This document shows, one piece after another, positions 2,141-14,664 of a DNA stretch of 15,699 bases. Position 1 is the first letter of the stretch; each line of letters begins with the position of its first letter. Location of the stretch: positions 1-15,699 of IMG/VR virus record IMGVR_UViG_3300017469_000161; one strand, given 5' to 3'. The notes beneath the pieces were generated by a model. That model saw only the letters and a list, made by a program, of their open reading frames with translations. It made no database searches and was not told the origin of the DNA. The position numbers were made by a program, and so were the translations under genes.

Positions 2141-2238
2141 GATAAATTTCTTGCCCCAGAAGCCTTTTAAAAAGCGGTTTTAACGCTCAAACAGGTGTTT
2201 GAGGAAGATTTTTAAGTTTCTGACACCAGATGTTTTTT
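2141..2238. promoter_or_regulatory. Divergent promoter region with two TATA boxes and a central 18-bp palindrome CTCAAACA-GG-TGTTTGAG (2186-2203)
   Basis: TTTTAAAAA at 2165-2173 serves the minus-strand gene and GAAGATTTTTAAG at 2204-2216 serves the ATPase; the palindrome lies between them. Confidence 0.7.
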
Positions 2239-4002
2239 ATGCAATTACAAGAACAACAAGGAACGAACAGTGAAAATTTGTCGTCTTCTGCCGATGTTTC
2301 TACTGTTGCTAGGCGTTTGAAGGACGAGTTAGATAAATACGTTGTCGGAAATGAAGACGTCAAAACAGCTGTTATAACAGGACTTTTGACAGGGTTTCCT
2401 ACTCTGCTCATCGGAGACCCAGGTACTGCAAAAACGTATACTATCGAAATCCTTTCGAAAATGATCGATGGGGTTAAACCAGAAGAGCTTTTCATAGTAC
2501 TCGCTCACGAGGCAATGACACCAGAAGACATTTTTGGAAATACAAACCTAAAAAAATTGAGAGAAGAAGGAGTACTAGAATATATTACCGAAGGCTTCTT
2601 GCCTTCTGCTAAACTAGTCTTCATAGATGAGATTTTCAAGAGCAACAAAGTCCTTGCCGAATCGTTGTTTAGAGCGATCAACGAAAAGAAGTTCAGAAAT
2701 GGAAGTAAAGAGGTCTCGTTACCGTGGCTAGCGTTCTTTTCTGCGTCAAACGAGGTCAGGGTAAATACTCAAGCGGACAGAGCATTCCTCGATAGGTTCA
2801 AGGTATTTGCTACAGTTCTTTCGCCTAACTTGGAAGACGTGCAAAACCTCAGCTCAACCGCAGAAAGGTATCATAAAGTTCTTACAGCAACTAAGCCGAG
2901 TTCCATCCCAACTGTAACGAGTTATGACGAAGTTAAAAAAATACAGGAGAAAATTCTTTCAGATTACATCAAATACACAACGCAAGATATTGTACTCGAA
3001 GCGGTGAAGCAGGCTAATCTCATCCTAGGTGCAATAGCACAGGCTTTGCAAAACCCAAGAGCGTTTAGCGATTCTGGCATTGTCAGGTCGTACTTCAGAT
3101 CGATGGGCGGATATCTGACAATCAGCGAGAGAAAATTCAAAAGTATAATACAAGTCGCCAACGCGTTACGTGATATGTTCGGCAATTCAACAATTACACC
3201 AGTGCATACTGCATTAGCATTCTATCTTACAATCCCGTTCACACCAGAGCTAAAGAATATAGTATCTTCTCTAGTCCCGACATTGATCAAATCATATTTC
3301 AACACAACTGGATCGAATAATTCTTCTAATAATTCTTCTATTGATATTGCTAGCTCGCTAGATAGCATTTCTAAAATACCAGAGAAAATATTGAGGGACA
3401 AAAACCTAAATGATTTGTTAGTCAAAGCGTCGGCATACGCTGTAGATGTTATTGCTAAAAATTTTCCAGCGACGTCGCCCGAGTTAGCACAATATAAAGC
3501 AGATCTTGTTACGAAATTTTCTGAGGTAGCGAATAATAGTGATGACATACAACAGAAGCTGGCTAATTTTAAGAAAGCTGTAGGTATCCTGGTCGATATT
3601 GAAACCAAGTATGCCAGTAATACTAAAATTAAAACTTTAGCACAGAAACTGGTTCAAAATATTGTATCTACTGTCTCCAAGCAGATAGATGTAAATCGTA
3701 TAACCTCTGATGCGATGGATGAGCTTCAGAAAACTTATGAGAAGATAAAAGCTGAAATTGAAAGTAAATATAACGAACTAATGAAACTAGGAGGGAGCGA
3801 CGAGAACAGCAAACTCATCTCGGGGATACGAAAATTCTTCCCGCAATTTTCGGACGCATTACCAGAAGCAGTGGTAGCCCAAGAGCAAAAAGAAGTGATA
3901 ATGAAGCGTCTTAACATTGCTGTAAGGTGGGCGAAGAGTAAGATACTAGATTTCACAAACACATTAAATGAACTTTCACAACTGGCACAAGTGACGAAGT
4001 GA
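2239..4002 (+). CDS. MoxR/RavA-family AAA+ ATPase with helical/coiled-coil C-terminus (ATV p618-like)
   Basis: Walker A GDPGTAKT, Walker B VFIDEIFK, ASNE sensor-1, AFLDRF Arg-finger, MoxR-type N-terminal VVGNEDV..AV..GLL.G; directly followed by a VWA gene with GTGA overlap. ATG 2239 fits TATA spacing; ATG 2230 is the alternative. Confidence 0.92.
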   Translation: MQLQEQQGTNSENLSSSADVSTVARRLKDELDKYVVGNEDVKTAVITGLLTGFPTLLIGDPGTAKTYTIEILSKMIDGVKPEELFIVLAHEAMTPEDIFGNTNLKKLREEGVLEYITEGFLPSAKLVFIDEIFKSNKVLAESLFRAINEKKFRNGSKEVSLPWLAFFSASNEVRVNTQADRAFLDRFKVFATVLSPNLEDVQNLSSTAERYHKVLTATKPSSIPTVTSYDEVKKIQEKILSDYIKYTTQDIVLEAVKQANLILGAIAQALQNPRAFSDSGIVRSYFRSMGGYLTISERKFKSIIQVANALRDMFGNSTITPVHTALAFYLTIPFTPELKNIVSSLVPTLIKSYFNTTGSNNSSNNSSIDIASSLDSISKIPEKILRDKNLNDLLVKASAYAVDVIAKNFPATSPELAQYKADLVTKFSEVANNSDDIQQKLANFKKAVGILVDIETKYASNTKIKTLAQKLVQNIVSTVSKQIDVNRITSDAMDELQKTYEKIKAEIESKYNELMKLGGSDENSKLISGIRKFFPQFSDALPEAVVAQEQKEVIMKRLNIAVRWAKSKILDFTNTLNELSQLAQVTK

Positions 4003-5723
4003 GTATCATGCAAAGCTTCTTTCATGATAATGAAGATGATGAGAGAGAACTAACTAAACTAACAAACACTATTTTCGAAACACTGATAAATGATTCTGTA
4101 CGTTGGTCTGGATATCTTTCACTTCCACCAGACGTTATGGATAGTTTAAGAGATACTGTATATAAACTTGTCAAGATAGCATCACAACAAAACAAACTTC
4201 TTTTGCAATTCCCAGCAGTCCTCGCTTACTTTGTTTATAATTTTTTAAAAAATATCGATTTAGATAGAATAAAGGACATAAACGAAAAATTAAACAATAT
4301 TCAGCGTCTGATACAACGTAAAAACTTGCAAGGCTTATCATTCAGCACTATCAAACAGATGTTACAACAGGAATTACAGGAGAAAAAGTTCAGACGCAAC
4401 AGACCCAACAAAGGAGAAAAACAACAAGAACAGCAGAAACAAAGCGGAAAAAGACCCAACAAAGGAGAACAACAAGAAGGTGAAGAAGGAAACCAAGGAG
4501 AAGAAACACAACAAGGAGGAGAAGAAGGTGAGGGACAACAAAGTGGAGAAGAAGGTAACCAAGAGGAGGGAGAAGAAGGGGAGACACAAGAAGGTGAAGG
4601 AGAACAGCAAAGTGGAGAAGGGAACGAAGGAGAACAGGGCAATGCCCAAGAAGGACAGGAATCAGAAGGAGAAAGAGGAAATGAAGAGAGTCAAAGCGGA
4701 GAAGAAGGTGGAGAACAAGGAGAGGAATTAGGATTAGGAGAAGAAGGGCAAGAAAGCGGAGAAGAAGGACAAAACATGAATCAAGAGGGTGAGGAGCAAC
4801 AAGGAGAGGAATCAGAAGGTGAAGGTGGAGGGGAACAAGGAGAGGAATTAGGAGAGGGAGGACAGGAAAACGAAGGGCAAAATAGTGAGGAACAGGAAGG
4901 AGAGGAAAGTGAACAAGGAGGAGAACAAGGAAATGAAAACGAAGAGAAACAAAGTGGAGAAGAAAGCGGAGAAGGTCAGAATGGCGAACAAGGGGAAGAA
5001 AGCCAGGAGGGTAACGAGCAGGAAAATGAGAAACAAAGCGGAACTGAAGGGAATGAAGGAGAAGAGGGAGAAGAAGAGAGTCAAAGCGGAGAAGAAGGGG
5101 GAACGCAGGAAGGAGAAAGAGAGGGTGGGGAACAAGAATCAGGAGAAGGACAAGAAGGTGAAATCGAAGGAAATCAAGAGGAGGGAGAGGAAGGAGAACC
5201 GCAAGAAGGTGAAGGAGAGGGAGAAGGACAGAGTGGAGAAGAAGGTAACCAAGGTCAAAGCGGAGAAGAAGAGGGACAGCAAGGTGAAAGCGAAGAAAAT
5301 CAGGGTCAAAATAGTGAACAAGAATCAGAAGGTGGAGAAGGACAGGAAATCGAAGATGTTACAGAAGACCTCGAAAATAGCATAGATGAAGAATCAAGAA
5401 TTTTAGATGAATTGCAAGAAAGCCTTCAAGAGTCCGTATCGGCTTTATCTATTGGGAAAGGCTCAGGAGGAGGAATATTAAAGGATATCAATCCTAGAGT
5501 TTTAGAATTATTAGAGAGAGCTAACAGGGTTTTGGCTTTGGCTAATCAAGTTGATTTACAGTACGCTAACAGAGGCGTTAAAGATCAGGGAGGGGTGATG
5601 AAGGGAATAACGACTGGAAATAATGTCAAACATATGTTTAAGAGCCAACTAGTTTTACCAGATGAAATTTTCCTCGAACGGTATACAAATAGAGCTGATG
5701 AAGGGAATAACAACTGGAAATAA
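3999..5723 (+). CDS. N-terminal part of VWA-domain partner of the MoxR ATPase (ATV p892-like), with about 320-aa Glu/Gly/Gln-rich linker; truncated by a frameshifting duplication
   Basis: GTG start overlaps the ATPase stop; helical N-domain, long acidic low-complexity tract, then GITTGNNVKHMFKSQLVLPDEIF, resembling the pre-VWA segment of ViaA/CoxE-like proteins. Goes out of frame at the 5695/5696 duplication junction. Confidence 0.8.
   Translation: MSIMQSFFHDNEDDERELTKLTNTIFETLINDSVRWSGYLSLPPDVMDSLRDTVYKLVKIASQQNKLLLQFPAVLAYFVYNFLKNIDLDRIKDINEKLNNIQRLIQRKNLQGLSFSTIKQMLQQELQEKKFRRNRPNKGEKQQEQQKQSGKRPNKGEQQEGEEGNQGEETQQGGEEGEGQQSGEEGNQEEGEEGETQEGEGEQQSGEGNEGEQGNAQEGQESEGERGNEESQSGEEGGEQGEELGLGEEGQESGEEGQNMNQEGEEQQGEESEGEGGGEQGEELGEGGQENEGQNSEEQEGEESEQGGEQGNENEEKQSGEESGEGQNGEQGEESQEGNEQENEKQSGTEGNEGEEGEEESQSGEEGGTQEGEREGGEQESGEGQEGEIEGNQEEGEEGEPQEGEGEGEGQSGEEGNQGQSGEEEGQQGESEENQGQNSEQESEGGEGQEIEDVTEDLENSIDEESRILDELQESLQESVSALSIGKGSGGGILKDINPRVLELLERANRVLALANQVDLQYANRGVKDQGGVMKGITTGNNVKHMFKSQLVLPDEIFLERYTNRADEGNNNWK
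4401..5350 (+). repeat. Purine-rich degenerate coding repeats (QSGEEG/QEGE/GEQGEE units; AGACCCAACAAAGGAGAA twice at 4401-4418 and 4452-4469)
   Basis: Directly visible recurring units such as CAAAGCGGAGAAGAAG and CAAGGAGAGGAAT on an A/G-dominated plus strand. Confidence 0.85.
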
Positions 5724-5795
5724 TGTCAAACATATGTTTAAGAGCCAACTAGTTTTACCAGATGAGATTTTCCTCGAACGGTATACAAATAGAGC
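5596..5795 (+). repeat. Tandem duplication of exactly 100 bp (5596-5695 / 5696-5795), 2 mismatches
   Basis: TGATGAAGGGAATAAC...GTATACAAATAGAGC occurs twice; differences are G5612/A5712 and A5666/G5766. Confidence 0.97.
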
Positions 5796-6348
5796 CTTAC
5801 TGCAAAGAGCGGTAGAAAATGAGGGCGTTGGGGACTTATATTTCATGATAGATAAAAGCGGGTCTATGGGAGCTCCTATGCCGAACGGGTACACGGCGTT
5901 TGAAAACGTTTCCGCTGTAGCCTTAGCTTCTGCTATGGAAGTAGAAAAGAATAGTAAGAAGGTGTTTGTGCAATACTTCGATACTTCGTCAACGGAGCCT
6001 CTGGATGTTAACAACGTTTTCGAAGTAGCTCAGACCACACCTGGAGGAGGAACGAACATGATGGTTGCATTACGAGACTTCATGGAATATTATAATAACT
6101 ATCCAGGGTTAAAGGACATAAAACAGATCTTCATACTATCTGATTTTGAGACGGATTATGATACTACGCTTTATTATTTCAAGAACTTTGCCAGAAATAA
6201 TGGCTTAGTAGTTACGTGCATACATGTATATAATGATGAAGTGCCTGCCGGTATGCAATCCATAATAGACGAACTCTGTGATGAATATTATAAATTTAAT
6301 AATTATGACGCCAGCGAATTATTTTCAGTCGTGTATTCGAAGCTTTAG
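5698..6348 (+). CDS. C-terminal VWA (von Willebrand A) domain portion of the split MoxR partner gene
   Basis: MIDAS motif YFMIDKSGSM (DxSxS), PGGGTN (T), FILSDF (D). The frame is open from 5662; it joins the 3999 ORF in frame if one 100-bp copy is removed (2250 nt, 749 aa). Confidence 0.88.
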   Translation: MKGITTGNNVKHMFKSQLVLPDEIFLERYTNRALLQRAVENEGVGDLYFMIDKSGSMGAPMPNGYTAFENVSAVALASAMEVEKNSKKVFVQYFDTSSTEPLDVNNVFEVAQTTPGGGTNMMVALRDFMEYYNNYPGLKDIKQIFILSDFETDYDTTLYYFKNFARNNGLVVTCIHVYNDEVPAGMQSIIDELCDEYYKFNNYDASELFSVVYSKL

Positions 6349-6382
6349 CTCTTTTTAATACCTTACGACCCAAGTTAAAACC

Positions 6383-6742
6383 ATGAAATATTACGAAGTT
6401 AATGTGAGGACGTATTTGCCGGAGCCGGTCGCAGAATATTTCGTAAACTGCTTTTCACTAAAATTGCCGAACAAGTATTATGAGGTCGGTGATGTAATAA
6501 CATTTAGAGATGAGGAGAAAAAGGTAAGCGTCAATGTGCCAACAGAGCAAGTTAGAGGCATTACAGACGCATTACTGGCGTCTGCGTTAGATTTTTATAT
6601 AGCTCTCGCCGTTTGCACCGACAACAATATTTTGCTATACCGTATGATAAAAAAGGCGAGAGCAAAAGTAAAGGAAATGCTAAAAATAGATAATATAAAC
6701 CTCGACCCTGAGTTTCCAATCTGTCTAAAAGGTGGTAAATGA
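6383..6742 (+). CDS. Hypothetical protein, 119 aa
   Basis: ATG about 24 bp after TTTTTAAT (about 6352-6359), consistent with a leaderless transcript; its stop overlaps the next start (ATGA). Confidence 0.8.
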   Translation: MKYYEVNVRTYLPEPVAEYFVNCFSLKLPNKYYEVGDVITFRDEEKKVSVNVPTEQVRGITDALLASALDFYIALAVCTDNNILLYRMIKKARAKVKEMLKIDNINLDPEFPICLKGGK

Positions 6743-7185
6743 TGCAACATGAACTTACACCGTCTGATATGATCGCACTAATCTCTGAAGCTTTAGGGGA
6801 AAAAGATGAGGAGGGCGACCCAGAGACCTTGATAAAACTATTACTACGCGACGATTTGCCTAAACAAACGAGGTTAATTATTCTTAACTGTATCGTGAAA
6901 AACTGCGGGTTGCAGACAAGTTTATCAATATTAGATCCATTTATTCCCATAGAGGAAATACAATCAATAGAGACGTTGAAAATCGAGGGGACGAAAATAC
7001 TTGCGTGCATTAATTATACAAAAGTTAGAGATTGTTATTTGATAATTTTAGCGAATAGACAGTTCCATATAAAAAGAGTAACTAATCCTGCCGAATTATT
7101 ACAGAAGGTGAAGCAACAGCAAGGAGGAGGAAAGAAACAAAGCAAGGATATTATTTTAAGTAAGCTCGGAGGTGAGGATCTCTGA
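6739..7185 (+). CDS. Hypothetical protein, 148 aa
   Basis: ATGA overlap with the upstream gene, GGTGG RBS, co-oriented in a probable operon with the downstream ATPase. Confidence 0.8.
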   Translation: MMQHELTPSDMIALISEALGEKDEEGDPETLIKLLLRDDLPKQTRLIILNCIVKNCGLQTSLSILDPFIPIEEIQSIETLKIEGTKILACINYTKVRDCYLIILANRQFHIKRVTNPAELLQKVKQQQGGGKKQSKDIILSKLGGEDL

Positions 7186-7223
7186 CGGCTCCCCGCCCTA
7201 AAGGGCGAGGGTTCATAAGACGG
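7182..7223 (-). mobile_element. IS200/IS605-family end-like palindromic remnant flanked by 11-bp direct repeat GGTGAGGATCT (7171-7181, 7224-7234)
   Basis: Minus strand reads GAACCCTCGCCC-TTTA-GGGCGGGGAGCCGTCAG, a GC-rich hairpin ending in TCAG that resembles, from memory, right ends of Sulfolobales tnpB elements. No transposase gene nearby. Confidence 0.6.
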
Positions 7224-7234
7224 GGTGAGGATCT

Positions 7235-8746
7235 GTGATATGCGAAGTCGTTGCCAGTTCATTTAAGCCACGTGACGGTGACGTTGTGAACGCTGACATA
7301 ACAAACATACGTTTTGCGTATCCACCGAGCTGTATCTTCTCGTCTCAGTACACGCAATTCATTTATGTTGATCATCCTTTGCCGAAGATAAGCCGTCTAA
7401 GGTTTAAGAGAGAGAATGGGGAAGAAGTGAAGGACGACAATTACGTCGTAATAGATATTGGAGACGATTTCTTAGTTTTACCAATAGAAGTTTGGAATAA
7501 ACTGAAGGAGCTTATATCGACTTACCTTAGTGAAGGAACTTTGCACGGAGGCATCCTATTGTACGGCGTCCCAGGCACCGGTAAATCATACATTGCTACT
7601 AAATTACTTACAAGGATTCTGGGGTTGAAAGCAATTGTTAAGCAACCTACCGATTTCTTAACAAAATATGTCGGTGAACCTTACCAATTGCTAAACGATT
7701 TCATAAATAGACAACTATTTTCCAACAAACCTTCCATCATAGTTTTTGACGAGGGAGAAAGGCTTTTACTAAAAAGAGGTGGAGGGGGCGAAGCTGAAAA
7801 ATTGGTAGAGGACAATATGAAGAATATATTATTAGAAAAATTGCAGGAATTTGCGGATTCGCAATATCCTTCGATTCTCGCATTAACTACTAACGCTTCA
7901 ATAAACGATATGGACGACGCAATGCTGAGGAGGTTTCCCTGGAAAATTTATTTCCCTCCCTATTCGCACACCGTTTACGAGTACATAGCGAGGAAGATAA
8001 CTACACAAAGAACTTTCAAAATTGAGGATAAGGAATATGATGTGCAGAAACTATCGTTTTATGCATCTGCTACCGGGATTTCTGTAGCTGAGTTCAGGAC
8101 TATAGTACAGACTGGGACTATCTCTTTTCTCAGGTCAAAAAGTAACTTCCCGAGGAGACTTGTGCCATTCGAATTACAAGATAAGGAAAGTATTTTAGAT
8201 ATAACGAAATTGCCCCAACTCAGGCGTTTTGATATCAAAAATAAGAACGTAAAAATGTTATGCGAAGGAGCATTATATACTATGACTGCAGTAGTAACAA
8301 GCTATTTTCTTACAAGTGAGAATAGACCCGTTTACCTTATAGATTTACAAGAGTCCACTTCCTTGAGGTATGGAAGCGATGATATTATTACATTACTCAA
8401 GCAGGAAAACAAACCTGTCGGTATAATTCATATGCATGGCAATCTCAACATCAACAAACAGCTGTTAATAGAGCGTCTACTCGAAGAGGATAACGTTAGT
8501 TTTGTGGTAATAACGAGTTTTGATAGTTCATTATTACAAGTACAAACATTGAAGCTTCTACCTAGGATTGATATAACACAATTGCCTGCAACTGACACAG
8601 ACATTTTGAAAAAAATATTGTACACGGTAGACACATTTTACGGGCTGAAGTTGGACATGCAAAAAACTATGAACGAACTGTACAGGGAGATGGACTTTAG
8701 AAAAGCTATGGACGTGTTGGAGAAAATGATCGCCATGACAATCTAA
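7235..8746 (+). CDS. AAA+ ATPase (classical CDC48-like AAA domain), probably ATV p529-like
   Basis: GILLYGVPGTGKS Walker A, TKYVGE pore loop, IIVFDE Walker B, LTTN sensor-1, DDAMLRRF second region of homology; GGTGAGG RBS before the GTG start. Confidence 0.88.
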   Translation: MICEVVASSFKPRDGDVVNADITNIRFAYPPSCIFSSQYTQFIYVDHPLPKISRLRFKRENGEEVKDDNYVVIDIGDDFLVLPIEVWNKLKELISTYLSEGTLHGGILLYGVPGTGKSYIATKLLTRILGLKAIVKQPTDFLTKYVGEPYQLLNDFINRQLFSNKPSIIVFDEGERLLLKRGGGGEAEKLVEDNMKNILLEKLQEFADSQYPSILALTTNASINDMDDAMLRRFPWKIYFPPYSHTVYEYIARKITTQRTFKIEDKEYDVQKLSFYASATGISVAEFRTIVQTGTISFLRSKSNFPRRLVPFELQDKESILDITKLPQLRRFDIKNKNVKMLCEGALYTMTAVVTSYFLTSENRPVYLIDLQESTSLRYGSDDIITLLKQENKPVGIIHMHGNLNINKQLLIERLLEEDNVSFVVITSFDSSLLQVQTLKLLPRIDITQLPATDTDILKKILYTVDTFYGLKLDMQKTMNELYREMDFRKAMDVLEKMIAMTI

Positions 8747-8751
8747 GCGAC

Positions 8752-8776
8752 GAGCCTCGCCCAGGGGAGGAAGTCA
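8752..8776 (+). repeat. Degenerate copy of the IS-end-like hairpin motif (GAGCCTCGCCCAGGGGAGGAAGTCA)
   Basis: Aligns to the reverse complement of 7182-7214 (CCTCGCCC...GGGGAG..GTCA) with the loop and part of one arm deleted. Confidence 0.5.
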
Positions 8777-8783
8777 ACTAAAC

Positions 8784-8800
8784 TTTTTAAACAGCTGTTT
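8784..8800 (+). promoter_or_regulatory. TATA box (TTTTTAAA) overlapped by palindrome AAACA-GC-TGTTT (8789-8800)
   Basis: TATA ends about 24 bp before ATG 8815; the palindrome matches the motif at the other promoters. Confidence 0.6.
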
Positions 8801-8814
8801 TAGAGCTATATATA

Positions 8815-9279
8815 ATGAGTGAAAATAATAGTAATAAGCGTCTTTCTTCATTCGCGACGTATGCAGAAGCTATAGCGAAAATACTAAACTTAATATATAC
8901 AATTGACCAACTTTCGCAATATTACAATCTTAACCAAATCTCTACACAGTACCTTAACGCGTCATTTACCCCTATTTCACCTAAAAAAATTGCAAATTAT
9001 TTTGGAGTTCAATACAACAAAATACCAAACCTAGTTCAGCAAACACAATACAATCCTGTGGCATTGGTAACTAAGGCAAATCAAATTGCACAGCAAATTG
9101 AACCAGATGTGTTAAATTCCCTGGCGTCCATGTATGGCGTCGAACCAGAGATAGTAAAATCGTTACAGGTATACCTACAGCTTGCACAAGTTTTGCCAAA
9201 ATTAGTTAATAATCAATCTGTTCAAGTCACTACTAACACGCAATATACAGCATCACCTAACGTATTAGAAAATTACTGA
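8815..9279 (+). CDS. Hypothetical protein, 154 aa, Gln/Asn-rich helical, possible virion protein
   Basis: Clean ORF with its own promoter; function inferred only from context and the shared promoter palindrome. Confidence 0.75.
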   Translation: MSENNSNKRLSSFATYAEAIAKILNLIYTIDQLSQYYNLNQISTQYLNASFTPISPKKIANYFGVQYNKIPNLVQQTQYNPVALVTKANQIAQQIEPDVLNSLASMYGVEPEIVKSLQVYLQLAQVLPKLVNNQSVQVTTNTQYTASPNVLENY

Positions 9280-9305
9280 CCCCCTCAACCCCCCAGAAAG
9301 TTAAA
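9280..9305 (+). repeat. Direct repeat copy 1 (CCCCCTCAACCCCCCAGAAAGTTAAA) containing a BRE/TATA-like element
   Basis: Near-identical to 9796-9820 (one indel, one substitution). Confidence 0.8.
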
Positions 9306-9332
9306 AATCATTATAATATAGATAATCTATTG

Positions 9333-9764
9333 ATGTCGAGACTACTGAAATTTGCCATAGTAGGAGGGGTAGGCACTTTGGTCAATGAACTAGTATTTTT
9401 ATCTACTACCAAGCTTTTATCCATATCGATATCATTAGCATTAGCAATTGAAATTTCAATAATTTTCAATTTTATGTTAAACGATGTATGGACATTTAAA
9501 GATAAGAGAATAGGAAACACATGGAAAAGGCTACTTAAATTTCATATGTCGTCAGCTAGTGGAGGAATTATTCAATATGCTGTGGTAGTTTCAATTATTG
9601 TAATTATGTTTCATTTTAGTAATGCCTCGGAAATAGTGACAATCTTGTTTTTTACGTCTTATTTAAAACTTCAATCTTTAGTACTTGGCATAATCAATTT
9701 CATAGGAATAATTTCTGGGTTCATCGTAAGATTTATAACAAGTATAAAGTGGGTATGGGTGTGA
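9333..9764 (+). CDS. GtrA-family membrane protein (putative lipid-linked sugar flippase)
   Basis: LLKFAIVGGVGTLVN N-terminus, NFMLNDVWTFKD, RLLKF and C-terminal RF...KWVW; four TM segments. ATG 9333 (TTG 9330 alternative). Confidence 0.88.
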   Translation: MSRLLKFAIVGGVGTLVNELVFLSTTKLLSISISLALAIEISIIFNFMLNDVWTFKDKRIGNTWKRLLKFHMSSASGGIIQYAVVVSIIVIMFHFSNASEIVTILFFTSYLKLQSLVLGIINFIGIISGFIVRFITSIKWVWV

Positions 9765-9820
9765 ACTACCACGCCCTCGCGGAGGGGGACTTTCGCCCCC
9801 TCAACCCCCAGAAATTTAAA
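9765..9820 (+). repeat. GC-rich hairpin element plus direct repeat copy 2 (9796-9820) ending in GAAA-TTTAAA BRE/TATA
   Basis: GAGGGGG (9782-9788) pairs with CCCCCTC (9796-9802); alternative stem CCCTC-GCG-GAGGG (9774-9786). Resembles, from memory, Sulfolobales IS605-type left ends. Confidence 0.6.
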
Positions 9821-9824
9821 CATG

Positions 9825-9840
9825 TAAAACATATGTTTTA
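9825..9840 (+). promoter_or_regulatory. Perfect 16-bp palindrome TAAAACATATGTTTTA between TATA and start codon (putative operator)
   Basis: TATA at 9815-9820, ATG at 9844. Confidence 0.7.
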
Positions 9841-9843
9841 ATT

Positions 9844-12117
9844 ATGGTAGTGATGAGAGTTAAGAGAAAGACCATATTCCTAATCCTGCTATATGCATTT
9901 TTCTTTATCTTACCATTTTTCCTGTTAACAGCAAAAGCTAGTCTTATCCAACAAGAAGTACCTATCTCAGTTAATGTAAACGCAAACATTTCGCAAGGGC
10001 TAATTTACATTGCTCCACTCCCACAACAAACCCAAGTGTTCGGTCAAAATTACTACGTATCAAACTCATTGGGTTATTATGAATACTCATATTTGTTCTC
10101 AGCAACACCACCGTTGCTGGTATGGTACGAGCCAGCTCCTTCATCACAAACTTATTATTTCGTTTACGGGGGAAATACTCAAGCTAGTGCCGTAACCACT
10201 GGTGTGTTTAGTTTTTTCACTCAGTTCTATTATCTCAACACCTCTATCTTCAATGTTTCCGGTGTTTCGTTACTTGGAGGGTCATTGGTGCTAAACGGGC
10301 AAAATAGCCTTGTAACTTTTACAACGACTGCGTTGCGTTATACATCTGCAGTTATGCTTTACACCTTTCAATCTTCAGCTGTTCTAACGCCACCTGAATT
10401 GATATATACTGGCTCAATTCCTTCAGGTAGCATAGTTACGCTAAGCCTTTTCTCATATTCCAACTTACAGACAATACCTTCGTATACCGCGTTTCCTTTC
10501 GGGTCTACGACCTGGGTTATGGCTTCCGACGGTTACGTTAAAAGCACACAATTCACAATTTCAAATACACAATTTACATATAACGCCCAGGTGGCAGGCA
10601 TGCCGAACGAAGAAGTTGCCAAAGTCGCTTTGCCACAATCATCTATGTACGGATTGGTGTTTGGGTCGTCAGTGCTTTTACAGTACCCTTCTACTCAATA
10701 TTTAGCACCGCAAACTGTAGCCCCGCAATCCATTACGTTTAACGATACTTTTGCCGTATCTCAAAGTGCATCCTACGGTTCTAATTCCGTCCTGTTAGAA
10801 GACCCAGTATACTTCTTTAACCCAACGTTACTTAACGGTTCTAATATCCTAGTGTATAACGATAGCAAATGGTACTCCTTACCAGTGCAAGCCAGCAATC
10901 TGAAACTTGACCTAAACCATGTAGACATGTATATTTTACCTTATAACTCGTCTTCCAATTACATATCCTTCGAAGATATACCAGTGGGTAGTACAATTTC
11001 AATCAAGTATACAAACGGCTCCACATATTCTGTTACCGCGAGCGGGAACACGGTAAACACAGTAGGAGGCGTGAGTTTAGTTGATCTTAAAATTTATGGA
11101 CGGAATGTGGTAGGGATATCGATCCAGCCGTCGTTAACAAACACACAAGTCAATTACAACATGCTTGTTGGGTTTACTGACTTTTTGCACAAAGCTGGGC
11201 TGATAGTAAATACGACAGGCGTATATGTATATAACTCTCAAACAGCTGTTACAAAGCTGGTAAAGAATCCGCAATTCCCAGCTGATGTTGGAGTTGGCTA
11301 TGCAGACATAGGCAATATATTCTATCTCATAGGTTTCTATTATTACCCAGGTTCTTTTTACACGTTCATAACGCCTATGCCAAACCCGGTCGCGTCAACT
11401 GGTATAGTTCCTTATATTAATTATAATGGCACAATACCGCTATCTGTATCAAGTATCGGTACAACACTGTCTTCCGGTCTGTATTATGAAACTACAGGTA
11501 TCGTATCAGTTGCAACAGGTTTGCCTACAGCATTACAGTCTTCCGTGCTCAGTTTGACGACAGCTCCGGGAGACGCAATAGTCAATAACAATAATACAGT
11601 CTACCAAACTAAGCTAACAAATTCGTCGTCTCTAACACTAGTAGGCTTCACTGGGTATAACCTTGTTGTACAGTATGGGAACATACAATCCCAACTTCTC
11701 ATATCCAGTAACTATTACCCAACAAACTTGCCAACGAATTTACAAGTAGTTGTTACAGTATCGGAATCCTCTAGGTCGATAACAATTTCCACATCACCGC
11801 TACCAGTGAAACCAGTCCAGGTTGCATCATTGAATGTTACTAATACAACCAATGTAAAGTATAACGGTAGTAGCGGATCTTCATTTACAACTAGTATACA
11901 TTCGACAAATAACCAACTAATAGGAATTATAACATACTATAGTTTTCTAGCAATAGCTGTAGCATCTTATCGTTATTCTTCTCAACTGTGGTCTTCAACA
12001 TTGTTTCTTAGTTTCGCTACACTCTCTATAGGTCTGCTCTTCGCTAACTATATAGTACTACCCTTCAGTATCGGTGCCGTAATATTAGGCTTCATCTTCA
12101 AAAGGCTAAACCTCTGA
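9844..12117 (+). CDS. Large secreted, C-terminally membrane-anchored Ser/Thr/Tyr-rich glycoprotein (putative virion envelope/adhesion protein), 757 aa
   Basis: Signal peptide (KRK, hydrophobic stretch, AKA-S), beta-rich charge-poor body, 15 N-X-S/T sequons by manual count, about 3 C-terminal TM helices ending KRLNL. Confidence 0.85.
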   Translation: MVVMRVKRKTIFLILLYAFFFILPFFLLTAKASLIQQEVPISVNVNANISQGLIYIAPLPQQTQVFGQNYYVSNSLGYYEYSYLFSATPPLLVWYEPAPSSQTYYFVYGGNTQASAVTTGVFSFFTQFYYLNTSIFNVSGVSLLGGSLVLNGQNSLVTFTTTALRYTSAVMLYTFQSSAVLTPPELIYTGSIPSGSIVTLSLFSYSNLQTIPSYTAFPFGSTTWVMASDGYVKSTQFTISNTQFTYNAQVAGMPNEEVAKVALPQSSMYGLVFGSSVLLQYPSTQYLAPQTVAPQSITFNDTFAVSQSASYGSNSVLLEDPVYFFNPTLLNGSNILVYNDSKWYSLPVQASNLKLDLNHVDMYILPYNSSSNYISFEDIPVGSTISIKYTNGSTYSVTASGNTVNTVGGVSLVDLKIYGRNVVGISIQPSLTNTQVNYNMLVGFTDFLHKAGLIVNTTGVYVYNSQTAVTKLVKNPQFPADVGVGYADIGNIFYLIGFYYYPGSFYTFITPMPNPVASTGIVPYINYNGTIPLSVSSIGTTLSSGLYYETTGIVSVATGLPTALQSSVLSLTTAPGDAIVNNNNTVYQTKLTNSSSLTLVGFTGYNLVVQYGNIQSQLLISSNYYPTNLPTNLQVVVTVSESSRSITISTSPLPVKPVQVASLNVTNTTNVKYNGSSGSSFTTSIHSTNNQLIGIITYYSFLAIAVASYRYSSQLWSSTLFLSFATLSIGLLFANYIVLPFSIGAVILGFIFKRLNL

Positions 12118-12143
12118 GGACAAGACGCCTTCCCAAGAGAAGA

Positions 12144-12177
12144 GAAAAAACTTATATTCATCTCAAACATATGTTTT
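12144..12177 (+). promoter_or_regulatory. BRE/TATA (GAAAAAACTTATAT) followed by CTCAAACATATGTTT palindrome (core 12165-12176)
   Basis: Located upstream of ATG 12189; same motif as at 9825 and 14529. Confidence 0.7.
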
Positions 12178-12188
12178 ACTGAGCTAAA

Positions 12189-13631
12189 ATGGAAGTGTAC
12201 TTACTAAACTTGTATCCAGGCACCGTCACTGTTACAGTAACTGATAATACTAATGGGAACTCGCAAACATATACGCTATCACAATATCAATACGTCGACA
12301 TTTCATCTATGATATCATCGCTATCCGATAGTCTCACAGTACAAGTACCTGGTGTAGGTACGGGTAATATACAACTTTTTTCTCCTACCCAAACAATATA
12401 CATTACTCAAAATAATATATATTCAAACTCTTTACCACCAGTTGCCACACTAAAAGAAATTCTCTATGACAACATTCTACAAAACATGAACACTGACATT
12501 ATAAATGTATTTCAAGCGTTGAACTCACTAATTTCTGAGTACGCTTCTGGGAAACCACTATCGCCATCTGCTTTATCTAACGTATCGTCAACTCTTCAGC
12601 AAATTAACAAAATGTTACAAAACGCTATACAATTTGAAAATGAAACTTCAACAACTTTCGAAGGAGTATCTGCGTATCAGCAAGTGTATAATAATTTAAA
12701 TCAAATATACGAGTCGCTAACTAACGATACATTGACAGTTGAGGAATTACAAAGTTTACAATTACCTAGTTATAGCACACCAGAGGCTGGTACTATAGCT
12801 TCTATTTATACACGACTACTTAATAATGCAATTAATACTATGAAAAGTGCTAGCTCACAGAGGAATAGCTCTACTTCATCGTCATCAACTAGCTCACAGA
12901 GCAAATCGTCATCAACTAGAACTCAAACATCTACACCGTCTAGCTCACAGGGAGCTAGCTCACAGGGAGCTGAGACATCAGGGCCTCTCCCACCAGGATC
13001 GTACGGGTGGATAAGCACACACACATCGAATGTAATACCAACACCACCCCCGTCATCAGGATCATCAGGAGGAACAACAACCGTGGCTACGACCCAGACT
13101 TCTACTCCTTCATCGTCATCATCTAGTACTCCAACATCTGTGTCGTCTTCGTCTCCTACTACATCCCCGACTCCGAGTTCTACCACATCTCCAACATCAT
13201 CCACATCTCCCACTACAATATCTCAGGGACAAGTGCTCGCTCAGATACAGGCAGGCGACATAAGTTCGCTTCAATCAGAAATATCAGAAATACCCCCAGA
13301 GATACTTCCAGTAGTTAGTGCTGTTACTCAATTGTACCAAATATATGACATACCAGATGGAACGCCATTATCTACTGTACTTGAACGTTTACTTAGTGAT
13401 ATTAGGGACGCATATTATAAAATAAGTAACCATAAGCAGGAACAAGTAAACACTCAAAAACTATCAATGCTACTGCAAGTATATAATACTCTTGCTAGTA
13501 ATGGATTAGCACCTGCAAGCCAAAGTGCGTCGAAATTAAGTAACCTGGTGCAAACTTCTGGAATTATACCAGCTGTACCATCTGTTTTAGGTCAATCTTA
13601 TCCGGGCAAGATATATAGCAATTTAGTCTAG
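12189..13631 (+). CDS. Hypothetical structural protein, 480 aa: beta N-domain, helical domain, Ser/Thr/Pro linker, helical C-domain
   Basis: Long ORF with its own promoter; low-complexity S/T tract with internal repeats (TAGCTCACAG four times, TQTSTPSS twice). Confidence 0.82.
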   Translation: MEVYLLNLYPGTVTVTVTDNTNGNSQTYTLSQYQYVDISSMISSLSDSLTVQVPGVGTGNIQLFSPTQTIYITQNNIYSNSLPPVATLKEILYDNILQNMNTDIINVFQALNSLISEYASGKPLSPSALSNVSSTLQQINKMLQNAIQFENETSTTFEGVSAYQQVYNNLNQIYESLTNDTLTVEELQSLQLPSYSTPEAGTIASIYTRLLNNAINTMKSASSQRNSSTSSSSTSSQSKSSSTRTQTSTPSSSQGASSQGAETSGPLPPGSYGWISTHTSNVIPTPPPSSGSSGGTTTVATTQTSTPSSSSSSTPTSVSSSSPTTSPTPSSTTSPTSSTSPTTISQGQVLAQIQAGDISSLQSEISEIPPEILPVVSAVTQLYQIYDIPDGTPLSTVLERLLSDIRDAYYKISNHKQEQVNTQKLSMLLQVYNTLASNGLAPASQSASKLSNLVQTSGIIPAVPSVLGQSYPGKIYSNLV

Positions 13632-14129
13632 TCAAGGGCTAAAAATAATTTTTTCCTTTTCGAATAATTCCCTTATCCTTCTAGCTTCTTCATCGTTTCT
13701 TTCTCCACCAGAATAAAGTAACGGTACGGCTATAGGTTCTTTCGTCAATCCGAACACGTTAGCAAATTGCGTTATAATTTCCTTTAATATAGATATCTTT
13801 AACATGTTGATTTCCTGTTCAACACCGTATGCGGTAGGTCGAAGTTCTAATTGTAGAATGTCATCAACGTTTGAATTGATAATATCATTAACCTTTACCA
13901 ACAATTCCCTTGTGTTCTTGACATCCCCAAGGTCAAACCCAAGCTTTATATAATTTTGAAGTACAGTCTCCGCTACTCGTCTCAACTCATTAAAAATTAT
14001 ATTATTCTCAGCCACATCAAGTTCACTAACTTGTTGTTCTAAAAATGTCGTAAGATCAGCAAACGCATATAAAATAGAATTCGCATCGCCGTTCGAAAGA
14101 ATAGAACCTAACTTTTCAGAAAGTTTCAT
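13632..14129 (-). CDS. Hypothetical protein, 165 aa, acidic helical
   Basis: ATG about 24 bp below a TTTTTAAAA box; its stop abuts the stop of the convergent 480-aa gene. Confidence 0.8.
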   Translation of the reverse strand: MKLSEKLGSILSNGDANSILYAFADLTTFLEQQVSELDVAENNIIFNELRRVAETVLQNYIKLGFDLGDVKNTRELLVKVNDIINSNVDDILQLELRPTAYGVEQEINMLKISILKEIITQFANVFGLTKEPIAVPLLYSGGERNDEEARRIRELFEKEKIIFSP

Positions 14130-14170
14130 GTAATCTACTTGGGAAATAAGATTTTAAAAAAAGTTATAGC

Positions 14171-14521
14171 TTAGTATTCGGAAACCATCTGCCGTGCATT
14201 CATGCCCGATAACAAGTTGTATGCTTCTTGCACTACAGGGAGATATTGCTGTTGGACTTCTGGTGGAATTTCAACGTCCTGGAACCCCATACCTCTCTTC
14301 TTCAACCCAGCATTATCTACTGCAGACCTTATTTCTTCTACTACTTTATGAAGAATTTCTTTTACTTGTGGGTATCCATCTCTGGTTGCGTTAGCCTCAA
14401 TTCCTGCTAGCTTTAACGTTATTGTTGGGTATTTTGTTACTTTCCCTTCTAGTATCGCCTTCAACGCACGTCTTGCTCCACCTAGGACGTCTCCTTTTCT
14501 TGGGAAATACTCATCCACCAT
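14171..14521 (-). CDS. Bicaudavirus four-helix-bundle coat/virion protein, ATV p131-like, 116 aa
   Basis: Y.P.KGD..GGA, YP..TLKLAG.EANA.R.G, KE..H..V and G.GFQ...IP.EV motifs match the ATV p131 sequence as I recall it. The true start is ATG 14521 (MVDEYF); the ORF-track extension to 14575 runs through the promoter. Confidence 0.85.
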   Translation of the reverse strand: MVDEYFPRKGDVLGGARRALKAILEGKVTKYPTITLKLAGIEANATRDGYPQVKEILHKVVEEIRSAVDNAGLKKRGMGFQDVEIPPEVQQQYLPVVQEAYNLLSGMNARQMVSEY

Positions 14522-14528
14522 TTTTGGT

Positions 14529-14568
14529 CTCAAACATATGTTTGAGCTAGTGGTTAAAAAACTTTTCG
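14529..14568 (-). promoter_or_regulatory. Coat-gene promoter: BRE GAAAAG, TATA TTTTTTAA, and perfect 18-bp palindrome CTCAAACATATGTTTGAG (14529-14546)
   Basis: The palindrome lies between the TATA box and ATG 14521, over the expected transcription start. Confidence 0.75.
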
Positions 14569-14664
14569 GATGCATTTCTAAGCATTTGGCACGTCAATTG
14601 GGGTTGAATAGGGACAGTTTCAGCCAAACCAGTTAGACAGAACATGGCTAACTCCCGACGTTCA

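What the first reader, a model, noticed from the sequence alone, without database searches (positions are those of the whole stretch)
2186..14546. Shared palindromic operator defines a candidate virion-morphogenesis regulon
Seen: AAACA-NN-TGTTT occurs in five short intergenic promoter regions: 2186-2203 (CTCAAACAGGTGTTTGAG), 8789-8800, 9825-9840, 12162-12176 and 14529-14546 (CTCAAACATATGTTTGAG). Arms are conserved and the 2-bp spacer varies (GG, GC, TA), which is the signature of a dimeric DNA-binding protein site. In four cases it overlaps or follows the TATA box (repressor-like position); at the divergent MoxR promoter it lies upstream of both TATA boxes (activator-like position). A rough random expectation at an assumed 36% GC is about 0.06 sites per window. 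Inference: one regulator, not identifiable in this window, co-controls the coat protein, envelope glycoprotein, 480-aa and 154-aa proteins and the MoxR-VWA chaperone, acting as a late-gene or carrier-state switch. I am not aware of this motif being described.
Basis: partly seen in the sequence, partly recalled or inferred. Interest (0 to 1): 0.8.

Follow-up and report, generated by a model that had tools for sequence, protein, structure and literature searches.

The report
Genome-wide palindromic protein-binding site in monocaudaviruses

Summary
AAACANNTGTTT occurs 7 times in the window (0.07 expected). Two more lie inside the VWA gene, and one of those comes from a 100-bp tandem duplication.

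The window is a roughly 91%-identical relative of Sulfolobus monocaudavirus SMV1. SMV1, SMV3 and SMV4 carry 28-31 copies each. About two thirds sit in the 12% of the genome that is non-coding, at about 17-20 of roughly 30 promoters. These include early, late/full-time and non-structural genes.

The centre is not a free spacer. The unit is AAACAK|MTGTTT, often extended to CTC...GAG. The promoter copies are conserved while their flanks diverge.

Copies inside genes are selected at the DNA level: all 7 K[QH][LM]F peptides in SMV1 use exactly the motif codons. Sites are also spaced more evenly than random. ATV carries the core ACAGCTGT 44 times. STSV2, YNP2 and Sulfolobales genomes show no such signal.

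The best reading is a set of sites for one dimeric, probably virus-encoded, DNA-binding protein that acts on the whole genome, probably as a silencer. The binding protein is unknown. The motif was not found in the searchable literature.

The parts
2186..2203 (.). 18-bp palindrome CTCAAACAGGTGTTTGAG. It is shared by the divergent promoters of the gp25-like gene (1490-2140, minus strand) and MoxR (ATG 2239), and lies upstream of both TATA boxes (2163-2174 and 2207-2216).
   Evidence: conserved in 12 relatives while flanks vary
5628..5639 (.). Intragenic copy AAACATATGTTT inside the VWA gene (codons K-H-M-F).
   Evidence: the orthologous site is present in SMV1, SMV4 and IMG/VR relatives, and is broken by synonymous changes in SMV3, SMV2 and L030
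5728..5739 (.). Second intragenic copy, created by the 100-bp tandem duplication at 5596-5795.
   Evidence: period 100, 2.0 copies, 98% match; single copy in all relatives
8789..8800 (.). Site AAACAGCTGTTT overlapping the 3' end of the TATA box (8783-8791) of the 154-aa gene (ATG 8815; SMV1 gp16 homologue).
   Evidence: conserved block within an otherwise unalignable upstream region
9825..9840 (.). 16-bp palindrome TAAAACATATGTTTTA between the TATA box (9812-9820) and ATG 9844 of the 757-aa membrane protein gene (SMV1 gp14 homologue).
12162..12176 (.). Site CTCAAACATATGTTT between the TATA box (12151-12158) and ATG 12189 of the 480-aa gene (SMV1 gp13 homologue).
14529..14546 (.). 18-bp palindrome CTCAAACATATGTTTGAG between the TATA box (14554-14561, minus strand) and ATG 14521 of the RIP/P131-family gene (14171-14521, minus strand).
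987..998 (.). One-mismatch intragenic copy AAACAGCTGTTA. The same type of variant occurs at 2363-2374, 4353-4364 (centre GA), 8456-8467 and 11240-11251. Other one-mismatch copies lie at 233-244 and 7303-7314.
   Evidence: 8 one-mismatch sites against 0.4 expected; 10-bp core AACAKMTGTT found 11 times against 0.06 expected
6349..6360 (+). TATA box of the gp20-gp19-AAA ATPase operon (ATG 6383). This is the one promoter in the window with no copy of the palindrome.

Best explanation
The palindrome (half-site AAACAK, full form CTC-AAACAK-MTGTTT-GAG; core ACAGCTGT in ATV) is the recognition site of one dimeric sequence-specific DNA-binding protein. That protein is most likely virus-encoded, and an RHH-type protein such as the tandem-RHH SMV1 gp50 family is the leading but unproven candidate. 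It acts on the whole viral genome, not on one gene class.

Most copies sit in core promoters. [quoted passage not shown] In ATV they abut the TATA/BRE region. In archaeal promoters, occupancy at either position blocks recruitment of RNA polymerase or TFB. Further copies lie inside long genes and between convergent genes at roughly 1-kb spacing, where they would act as roadblocks.

The proposal is therefore a genome-wide silencing or global transcription-control network, functionally like the 'stoperator' networks of temperate mycobacteriophages.

Shown: the enrichment, the symmetry, the promoter position, the conservation, the DNA-level selection inside genes, and the family-wide distribution.
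Inferred: that a protein binds, whether it comes from the virus or the host, and whether it represses or activates.
For: Enrichment:
- 7 sites against 0.07 expected in the window.
- 28, 30 and 31 sites in SMV1, SMV4 and SMV3, against 0.04-0.1 expected in shuffles.
- ACAGCTGT is the most over-represented 8-bp palindrome in SMV1 (22 against 0.6), SMV3 (26), SMV4 (33) and ATV (44 against 0.8).

Symmetry:
- The site is dyad-symmetric out to 18 bp, with a constrained K/M centre.
- Isolated half-sites are not enriched.

Promoter position:
- In SMV1, 18 of 28 sites are fully intergenic although only 12.8% of the genome is non-coding.
- 9 of those 18 lie within 20 nt of a start codon, against 4.6 for random placement within the same intergenic regions (P=0.012).
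- Divergent promoter pairs share one central site.

Conservation:
- The five promoter sites of the window are conserved in SMV1, SMV3, SMV4 and about 10 IMG/VR relatives, while the flanking intergenic sequence diverges or cannot be aligned.

Selection inside genes:
- All 7 K[QH][LM]F peptides of the SMV1 proteome (0.30 expected) are encoded by exactly the motif codons (0.40 expected from codon usage; CTG is only 10% of Leu codons).
- Intragenic sites are retained in relatives in 10 of 24 comparisons, against 3.2 expected.
- Spacing is more even than random in SMV1, SMV4 and ATV, and in SMV1 and ATV this holds even when only the intragenic sites are randomised (SMV1 P=0.006, ATV P=0.028).

Not class-specific:
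- Sites occur at early (gp05, gp06, gp09) and late/full-time (gp03, gp11, gp24) promoters (PMC12199143).

Virus-specific:
- Every motif-rich IMG/VR contig is SMV-like.
- The 18-mer has 88 isolated hits in 185,579 species genomes, none in Sulfolobales.
- STSV2, which shares the laboratory host S. islandicus REY15A, has essentially none.

Candidate binder:
- SMV1 gp50 matches Pfam RHH_1 (1e-8) and phrog_876 'transcriptional repressor' (9e-29), and shows two beta-alpha-alpha units. It is conserved in SMV1-4, and its own promoter carries the site.
Against: - No binding protein has been shown, and no protein family follows the motif's distribution across viruses.
- The only small protein clearly shared with ATV (the gp43 family) also occurs in YNP2, which lacks the motif.
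- SMV2 keeps a gp50 orthologue but has only weak, degenerate sites.
- The promoter geometry differs between SMVs (downstream of TATA) and ATV (upstream of TATA, just after the preceding stop codon). That difference is also what least-cost placement of a non-transcriptional site would produce.
- The most highly expressed gene, gp03 (the major capsid protein), carries a site in the 'repressor' position (PMC12199143).
- About one third of SMV1 promoters, and the gp20-operon promoter in the window, have no exact site.
- Transcription start sites have not been mapped, so positions relative to the start of transcription are inferred from TATA and ATG.
- The spacing statistics rest on a few related genomes.
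Confidence: 0.45

Rival explanations
1. Genome architecture or self-marking. The sites are nucleation or bridging points for a protein of the virion nucleoprotein core. That protein would recognise and condense viral, not host, DNA for encapsidation. The sites sit in non-coding DNA mainly because they cost least there, and any transcriptional effect is secondary.
For: - Spacing is even, about 1.1-1.2 kb.
- Copies inside genes are under strong DNA-level selection, especially in very long genes.
- Sites occur between convergent gene ends where there is no promoter.
- SMVs and ATV place the sites differently within promoters.
- SMV1 virions carry a protein-rich nucleoprotein cargo (PMC10589707).
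Against: - Within intergenic regions the SMV sites are squeezed into the roughly 20-nt gap between TATA and ATG even when much free upstream sequence is available (P=0.012).
- No DNA-binding virion protein with this specificity is known.
- The P131 family is also present in STSV2, which lacks the motif.
Confidence: 0.25
2. A host (Sulfolobales) transcription factor binds the site, and the viruses have adopted its operator to tie their promoters to a host signal.
For:
- No viral protein tracks the motif.
Against: - The 18-mer is absent from every Sulfolobales species genome scanned.
- STSV2 and YNP2, which come from the same kind of hosts, lack it.
- The flanks differ between ATV and the SMVs, as expected if each lineage had its own co-evolving factor.
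- Caveat: only the strict 18-mer could be scanned in the species genomes. The 12-mer frequency in a host chromosome was not measurable here.
Confidence: 0.1
3. One reading: an operator that defines a virion-morphogenesis or late-gene regulon.
For: - All seven abundant virion-protein genes of SMV1 (gp03, 05, 06, 09, 11, 23/24) lie behind site-bearing promoters.
- Five of them have the site between TATA and ATG (PMC12199143).
Against: - Those genes fall into both early and late/full-time classes (PMC12199143).
- The same layout occurs at gp13, gp14, gp16 and gp51, and sites also occur at the gp32 operon, gp38, gp45/46 and gp50.
- About 60% of all promoters carry a site.
- A regulon model has no role for intragenic copies or copies between convergent genes.
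Confidence: 0.04
4. A virus-specific core-promoter element (of the proximal-promoter or initiator type) read directly by TFB or RNA polymerase, with no dedicated factor.
For: - It is AT-rich and lies in the region between TATA and the transcription start in many SMV promoters.
- ATV promoters were reported to lack a recognisable BRE (PMC5123050).
Against: - The distance to TATA varies from 0 to about 16 nt downstream and from 0 to about 30 nt upstream. Elements read by the basal machinery need a fixed position.
- Perfect dyad symmetry has no role in an oriented promoter element.
- Copies inside genes are under selection.
Confidence: 0.05
5. An RNA hairpin (a 5'-UTR or terminator structure), or a DNA modification, restriction or recombination site.
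For: - The two 18-bp versions can fold into a 7-bp stem (-7.9 kcal/mol at 37 C).
- The centre contains CAGCTG or CATATG, which are recognition sequences of known restriction enzymes.
Against: - The 12-bp versions do not fold (0 to -2.4 kcal/mol, no better than shuffles).
- Even the 18-bp stems would be marginal at 75-80 C.
- Most sites lie upstream of the inferred transcription start.
- There is no Rfam match.
- Restriction pressure would deplete a site, not enrich it.
- SMV1 has no annotated methyltransferase.
Confidence: 0.04

Closest known systems
Stoperator networks of Cluster A mycobacteriophages (L5 gp71, Bxb1 gp69)
   Same: - Tens of copies (about 25-35) of one 12-14-bp repressor site are spread over a roughly 50-kb viral genome.
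- Most lie in short intergenic regions and a few lie in genes.
- One protein thereby acts on the whole genome and not on one operon.
(The comparison rests on my own background knowledge of these phages; the densities on the archaeal side come.)
   Different: - Stoperators are asymmetric and oriented with transcription, whereas this site is a perfect palindrome.
- The hosts and transcription machinery differ (bacterial sigma-70 promoters against archaeal TBP/TFB promoters).
- Here the repressor and its effect on elongation are unknown.
Operators of archaeal-virus RHH regulators (SvtR of SIRV1, AvtR of AFV6, F55 of SSV1)
   Same: - These are virus-encoded RHH proteins that bind promoter-proximal sites overlapping the TATA box or transcription start and repress by occlusion (review PMC5569661).
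- AvtR and SIFV gp29 have two RHH motifs in one chain (PMC5569661, PMC9976892), as SMV gp50 appears to.
   Different: - Those regulators act on one or a few promoters, and their reported sites have different sequences.
- None is reported with about 30 conserved copies per genome, with selected copies inside genes, or as shared between virus genera.
- Binding of gp50 to this site is untested.
aCcr1-box (AGTATTA / A(T/G)G(A)TA(G)A(T/G)TACN), bound by cellular aCcr1 and its viral homologues ATV gp29 and SMV3 gp63
   Same: [quoted passage not shown]
   Different: - The sequence is unrelated.
- The targets are host cell-division genes.
- SMV1 lacks an aCcr1 homologue yet has 28 copies of the palindrome.
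Position-dependent dual regulators of archaea (SurR, TrmBL1/Tgr) and distributed architectural palindromes of bacteria (Noc NBS, SlmA SBS, MatP matS)
   Same: - All are short palindromes bound by dimers.
- For the dual regulators, the effect depends on whether the site lies upstream or downstream of TATA.
- For the architectural sites, tens of copies are distributed over a replicon.
(This comparison rests on my own background knowledge.)
   Different: - None of these is viral.
- None combines promoter-core placement with evenly spaced copies inside genes.
- There is no sequence similarity.
Eukaryotic E-box (CANNTG; AACAGCTGTT is the MyoD-type optimum)
   Same: The central CAGCTG, CATATG or CAGATG and the AACA...TGTT flanks match class-A E-boxes letter for letter.
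   Different: This is a resemblance only. No bHLH protein is known in archaea or their viruses, and none was detected here.

Membership tests
Palindromic operator of a dimeric transcription factor in archaeal promoters | Dyad symmetry of the site, with enrichment of the whole palindrome and not of isolated half-sites | tested here: met
   The position matrix from 96 sites is symmetric out to +/-9. Half-sites outside palindromes are at the chance level.
Palindromic operator of a dimeric transcription factor in archaeal promoters | Location in or next to the core promoter (BRE/TATA to transcription start) | tested here: met
   All 5 promoter sites of the window qualify. In SMV1, 9 of 18 intergenic sites lie within 20 nt of a start codon against 4.6 expected (P=0.012). 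ATV sites lie 0-12 nt upstream of TATA. Transcription start sites are not mapped, so positions are inferred.
Palindromic operator of a dimeric transcription factor in archaeal promoters | Conservation at orthologous promoters beyond that of the flanking sequence | tested here: met
   Alignments of 6-13 relatives per promoter show the motif kept while the upstream sequence diverges. The sites are degenerate in SMV2.
Palindromic operator of a dimeric transcription factor in archaeal promoters | A cognate protein binds the site and changes transcription | not testable with these tools
   Only candidates were found: tandem-RHH gp50, a 67-aa RHH ORF, and gp37, gp33, gp43 and gp46.
Temporal or functional regulon (late genes / virion morphogenesis) | Sites confined to, or strongly enriched at, one temporal or functional gene class | tested here: not met
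   Sites occur at early (gp05, 06, 09), late/full-time (gp03, 11, 24) and non-structural promoters, about 17-20 of roughly 30 promoters in all (classes from PMC12199143).
Stoperator-type global repressor network | Tens of copies of one site spread over the whole viral genome, mostly in short intergenic regions | tested here: met
   There are 28-31 exact copies per 49-64 kb, about 64% of them in the 12% that is non-coding.
Stoperator-type global repressor network | Asymmetric sites oriented with the direction of transcription | tested here: not met
   The site is a perfect palindrome.
Stoperator-type global repressor network | Bound repressor blocks initiation and elongation, conferring immunity or silencing | not testable with these tools
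   No binding or expression data are available for the site.
aCcr1-box regulon | Motif AGTATTA / A(T/G)G(A)TA(G)A(T/G)TACN | tested here: not met
   The sequences are unrelated.
Intrinsic RNA hairpin or known RNA family | A stem more stable than shuffled sequence at all copies, or an Rfam match | tested here: not met
   Three of the five promoter copies fold no better than shuffles. There are no Rfam hits.
Distributed architectural or self-marking sites | Copies under DNA-level selection inside genes and spaced more evenly than chance | tested here: met
   All 7 K[QH][LM]F peptides use the motif codons against 0.40 expected. The coefficient of variation of spacing is 0.63-0.73 against about 0.95-1.05 for random placement.
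Distributed architectural or self-marking sites | A structural or virion DNA-binding protein recognises the site | not testable with these tools
   Nothing is known here. The RIP/P131 family does not follow the motif's distribution across viruses.

The most novel reading that the evidence does not exclude
Bicaudaviruses of the ATV/SMV clade carry a genome-wide 'self' code. About 30-50 evenly spaced copies of one palindrome, kept even at the cost of protein sequence, would let a single viral protein tell viral DNA from host DNA. That protein would select and condense the genome into the fluid nucleoprotein core of the virion. Because the sites sit in core promoters, it would also set viral promoters apart from host promoters while the virion-borne RNA polymerase inhibitor RIP shuts transcription down globally.
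Probability: 0.2. Interest if true: 0.85.

Novelty: new variant of a known kind. Interest (0 to 1): 0.62.

Why it matters
Gene regulation in the large spindle-shaped archaeal viruses is essentially uncharted:
- The SMV1a time course ended with 'a complicated gene regulation pattern' (PMC12199143).
- A MEME search of ATV promoters reported no factor sites (PMC5123050).
- How these viruses express their genes alongside their own global RNA polymerase inhibitor RIP is an open question.

This work supplies a single short palindrome that is present at most promoters, conserved between the SMVs and ATV, and under selection even inside genes. That gives a concrete bait for pull-down, EMSA and reporter experiments, and it predicts one master DNA-binding protein.

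If the sites also serve genome recognition or condensation, they bear on how a capsid without a known packaging motor selects its DNA.

On the practical side, the site could serve as a portable operator for Sulfolobus genetic tools.

Tried and rejected
1. Literature. Searches for the motif strings and for SMV1/ATV promoter motifs found no archaeal paper that describes it. The anti-defence-gene promoter study (PMC11065993) and the two aCcr1 papers concern other motifs. The original SMV1 and ATV genome papers are not in the library, so an earlier mention cannot be excluded.

2. Finding the binding protein from its distribution across viruses. tblastn of all SMV1 proteins against SMV2-4, ATV, ATSV, STSV2 and YNP2 gave no small DNA-binding family that follows the motif. 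gp43 looked promising because it is 55% identical to ATV ORF98a and looks like a winged helix by eye. It was set aside because YNP2 has a homologue but no motif. It also has no Pfam or PDB match.

3. Structure of the gp50 orthologue. Folded from a single sequence, the model had mean pLDDT 55.6, too low for a fold search. Only the secondary-structure pattern was used.

4. Link to RIP. ATSV has a RIP homologue but only a weak signal (9 ACAGCTGT in 70.8 kb), so RIP presence does not predict the motif.

5. Host regulon. Only the strict 18-mer could be scanned in the species genomes, and it gave no Sulfolobales hit. The 12-mer is too short for that tool.

6. Supplementary expression tables of PMC12199143 are not held, so temporal classes are known only for the genes named in the text.

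7. RNA hairpins and Rfam families were checked and rejected.

Only SMV-like contigs were rich in the motif.

Full report
**1. Observation**

AAACANNTGTTT has seven exact matches in the 15,699-bp window. Dinucleotide shuffles give 0.07, and none of 200 shuffles reaches seven.

Two further copies, at 5628 and 5728, lie inside the VWA gene. They are the two copies of a 100-bp tandem duplication at 5596-5795. Relatives have a single copy.

- At the 154-aa, 757-aa, 480-aa and RIP/P131-family genes, the site lies between a TATA box and the start codon. At 8789 it overlaps the TATA box.
- At 2189 it lies upstream of both divergent TATA boxes.

**2. Identity of the window**

The window is IMG/VR contig UViG_3300017469_000161. 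It is a roughly 91%-identical relative of Sulfolobus monocaudavirus SMV1, covering the SMV1 region 15.7-33.6 kb in reverse orientation.

Pfam confirms the following:
- MoxR (bpMoxR/AAA_5)
- a weak VWA_2 match, below Pfam's cut-off, in the second VWA fragment
- an AAA ATPase
- a GtrA-like protein
- the RIP/P131 family for the gene at 14171-14521

The RIP/P131 family was long called the coat protein. It is now assigned to the nucleoprotein core, and the true capsid protein is the gp03 homologue, which lies outside the window (PMC10589707, PMC12199143).

**3. What the motif really is**

Ninety-six sites from the window, SMV1, SMV3 and SMV4 were pooled. The two central bases are almost always GC, TA, GA or TC. 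The flanks favour C-T-C/A on the left and the complement on the right.

The unit is therefore a spacer-less palindrome AAACAK|MTGTTT, often extended to 18 bp. Enrichment is nested:
- The 10-bp core AACAKMTGTT occurs 11 times in the window against 0.06 expected.
- The same core occurs 34 times in SMV1 against 0.24 expected.
- Isolated half-sites are at the chance level.

One-mismatch copies are also enriched: 8 against 0.4 in the window and 17 against 1.1 in SMV1. They include a recurrent intragenic variant, AAACAGCTGTTA.

**4. Genome-wide, not a regulon**

The complete relatives carry these numbers of copies:

| Genome | Copies |
|---|---|
| SMV1 | 28 |
| SMV1a | 27 |
| SMV4 | 30 |
| SMV3 | 31 |
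| SMV2 (more GC-rich) | 3, plus 14 one-mismatch copies against 0.5 expected |

In SMV1, 18 of the 28 sites are fully intergenic, although only 12.8% of the genome is non-coding. They precede about 17-20 of roughly 30 transcription units.

The layout TATA, then 0-10 nt, then the site, then 10-20 nt, then ATG is found at gp03, gp05, gp06, gp09, gp11, gp13, gp14, gp16 and gp51. The site lies upstream of TATA at gp04, gp10, gp24/25, gp32, gp38 and gp45/46.

The SMV1a RNA-seq study classes gp05, gp06 and gp09 as early, and gp03, gp11, gp23 and gp24 as late/full-time (PMC12199143). Both classes carry the site, so it is not a late-gene or morphogenesis-specific operator.

Within the window, five of the six promoters carry it. 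The exception is the gp20-operon promoter at 6349-6382, which has a good TATA box 27 nt before its ATG but no site.

**5. Evidence of function at promoters**

Within the intergenic regions that contain a site, the site lies within 20 nt of a start codon in 9 of 18 cases. Random placement gives 4.6 (P=0.012).

Alignments of the window's promoters with SMV1, SMV3, SMV4 and up to ten SMV-like IMG/VR contigs show the palindrome, usually together with the TATA box, as a conserved island in divergent or unalignable upstream sequence. In SMV2 the orthologous sites are degenerate.

**6. Evidence that the role is wider than promoter control**

Intragenic copies are 50-100 times more frequent than chance.
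- In SMV1 the tetrapeptide K[QH][LM]F occurs 7 times (0.30 expected from amino-acid composition).
- All 7 are encoded by exactly AAA-CAK-MTG-TTT (0.40 expected from codon usage; CTG is only 10% of Leu codons).
- Both the protein sequence and the codon choice are therefore shaped by the DNA motif.
- Intragenic sites are retained in SMV4, SMV3 and SMV2 in 10 of 24 comparisons, against 3.2 expected from the local fraction of identical 12-mers.
- Synonymous loss does happen, for example at the VWA site in SMV3, SMV2 and L030.

Exact sites also lie between convergent gene ends, where there is no promoter. Examples are SMV1 gp43/gp44 and gp27/gp28, and ATV ORF211/ORF98a.

Sites containing the 8-bp core are spaced more evenly than random. 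The coefficient of variation is 0.63 in SMV1 and SMV4 and 0.73 in ATV, against about 0.95-1.05. In SMV1 and ATV, the two genomes tested this way, the result holds when non-coding sites are kept fixed and only intragenic ones are randomised (P=0.006 and 0.028).

**7. Distribution among viruses and cells**

An unbiased ranking of palindromic 8-mers puts ACAGCTGT first in four genomes:

| Genome | ACAGCTGT copies | Expected |
|---|---|---|
| SMV1 | 22 | 0.6 |
| SMV3 | 26 | 0.76 |
| SMV4 | 33 | 0.63 |
| ATV | 44 | 0.8 |

ATV has none of the 12-mers. Its consensus is roughly aaRAACAGCTGTTYtt. Seventeen of its 51 ACAKMTGT sites lie in the 8% of the genome that is non-coding. They typically sit 0-12 nt upstream of a TATA box and 1-11 nt after the preceding stop codon, or at the centre of divergent intergenic regions.

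The signal is weaker in ATSV (9 in 70.8 kb) and SMV2 (6). STSV2 and Sulfolobales virus YNP2 show none.

All motif-rich contigs found by a 16-mer scan of IMG/VR are SMV-like.

The 18-mer palindrome has 88 isolated hits in the 185,579 species genomes. None is in Sulfolobales or any relative, and none lies in a motif-rich locus. This argues against a host regulon or common proviruses. The shorter 12-mer could not be scanned.

**8. Who binds it?**

Nothing in the window qualifies.

SMV1 encodes several candidates. The leading one is gp50:
- It matches Pfam RHH_1 (1e-8) and phrog_876 'transcriptional repressor' (9e-29).
- It has weak similarity to Arc and ORF56.
- It has two beta-alpha-alpha units in one chain, seen by eye and in a low-confidence model.
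- It is conserved in SMV1-4.
- Its own promoter carries the site.

The other candidates are:
- a 67-aa RHH ORF on the strand opposite the annotated gp40
- gp37 (CopG/NikA-like, found only in SMV1)
- the basic proteins gp33 and gp46
- gp43

A compact palindrome that is fully conserved at its centre suits a protein that reads the major groove on the dyad axis. RHH dimers do this; for example MetJ reads the 8-bp box AGACGTCT (my own background knowledge).

No family matches the motif's distribution across viruses. gp43 is the only small protein clearly shared with ATV, and it also occurs in the motif-free YNP2. The identity of the binder is therefore open.

**9. Mechanism**

The model that covers the most observations is one dimeric, probably virus-encoded protein with about 30-50 sites per genome.
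- At SMV promoters it would sit between TATA and the transcription start.
- In ATV it would sit against the TATA/BRE region.
- Both are standard archaeal positions for repression by occlusion (PMC5569661 for the viral RHH regulators).
- Copies inside long genes and between convergent genes would act as roadblocks.

Together this amounts to genome-wide silencing or global control. ATV is temperate and SMV1 infects chronically, so such control is plausible. The closest functional analogue is the stoperator network of Cluster A mycobacteriophages, with the difference that those sites are asymmetric.

I put this model at 0.45. The main rival, at 0.25, is an architectural or self-marking role in genome recognition or condensation for the protein-rich virion core. 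It explains the spacing and the intragenic selection equally well, but not the preference for the TATA-ATG gap.

The remaining rivals are less likely:
- a host factor (0.10)
- a basal promoter element (0.05)
- RNA structure or DNA modification (0.04); three of the five promoter copies fold no better than shuffles, and there is no Rfam match

**10. Novelty**

The motif strings appear in no archaeal paper in the searchable library. Sheppard et al. ran MEME on 46 ATV promoters and state that no obvious factor-binding sites emerged (PMC5123050). The SMV1a transcriptome paper describes no cis-element.

As a kind of element it is a transcription-factor-type palindrome, which is a known kind. Three features have, as far as I could find, not been described for an archaeal virus: its near-universal presence on one viral genome, the selected and evenly spaced copies inside genes, and its conservation across SMVs and ATV.

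**11. Limits**

- There are no mapped transcription start sites, no binding data and no full table of temporal gene classes.
- The spacing and retention statistics rest on a few related genomes.
- The host test covered only the strict 18-mer.

Noticed in passing
window 5596-5795: A 100-bp tandem duplication (2.0 copies, 98% match) lies inside the VWA gene. Because 100 is not a multiple of 3, the reading frame splits into ORFs 3999-5723 and 5662-6348. All relatives have a single copy. It could be a real disruption or an assembly artefact.
   Followed up: partly
window 4000-5600: This stretch is strongly purine-rich (GC skew 0.36-0.39, AT skew 0.33-0.51) and has several short imperfect tandem repeats. 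It is a low-complexity middle part of the VWA protein with no Pfam match.
   Followed up: no
window 2230-2241 and 14515-14575: Two start codons probably differ from the longest-ORF calls. MoxR most likely starts at ATG 2239: the sequence from that ATG onward is conserved in all relatives, while the ATG at 2230 is out of frame in most. The RIP/P131-family gene most likely starts at 14521 (116 aa, as annotated for SMV1a gp11), because a start at 14575 would put its own TATA box and the palindrome inside the gene.
   Followed up: partly
L002 (SMV1) 25272-27160; SMV1a (L003) 24090-24360; ATV (L130) 18150-18190 and 19775-19815: The SMV1 copy at 27062 lies within inserted DNA (IS200/605 plus about 90 nt) that SMV1a lacks. 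In ATV, the IS carrying ORF457 is flanked on both sides by a direct repeat of about 25 bp that includes ACAGCTGT. Mobile elements seem to insert at, or carry, the palindrome.
   Followed up: partly
L002 (SMV1) 41734-42003: The annotated gp40 is a low-complexity ORF. It is overlapped on the opposite strand by a 67-aa ribbon-helix-helix ORF (41757-41960, phrog_876 at 6.6e-13), which is the more plausible gene. PMC11065993 also lists it as an unannotated RHH ORF.
   Followed up: partly
L004 (SMV4) 40933-41308 and 42566-42941: SMV4 carries two copies of the highly conserved 101-aa gp38 gene. Each is preceded by an identical upstream region containing the palindrome.
   Followed up: no
window 8746-8815, compared with L001 (SMV1) 12214-12680: The window lacks SMV1 gp17 (a SWIM zinc-finger protein) and the IS200/605 element. 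tblastn also finds no gp17 homologue in SMV4, SMV3 or SMV2, so gp17 is found only in SMV1 among the genomes compared.
   Followed up: no
L002 (SMV1) 4708-5076: SMV1 gp06, an abundant virion protein expressed early, belongs to the RIP/P131 family and is the closest SMV homologue of ATV ORF145 (RIP), the global RNA polymerase inhibitor. [quoted passage not shown]
   Followed up: partly
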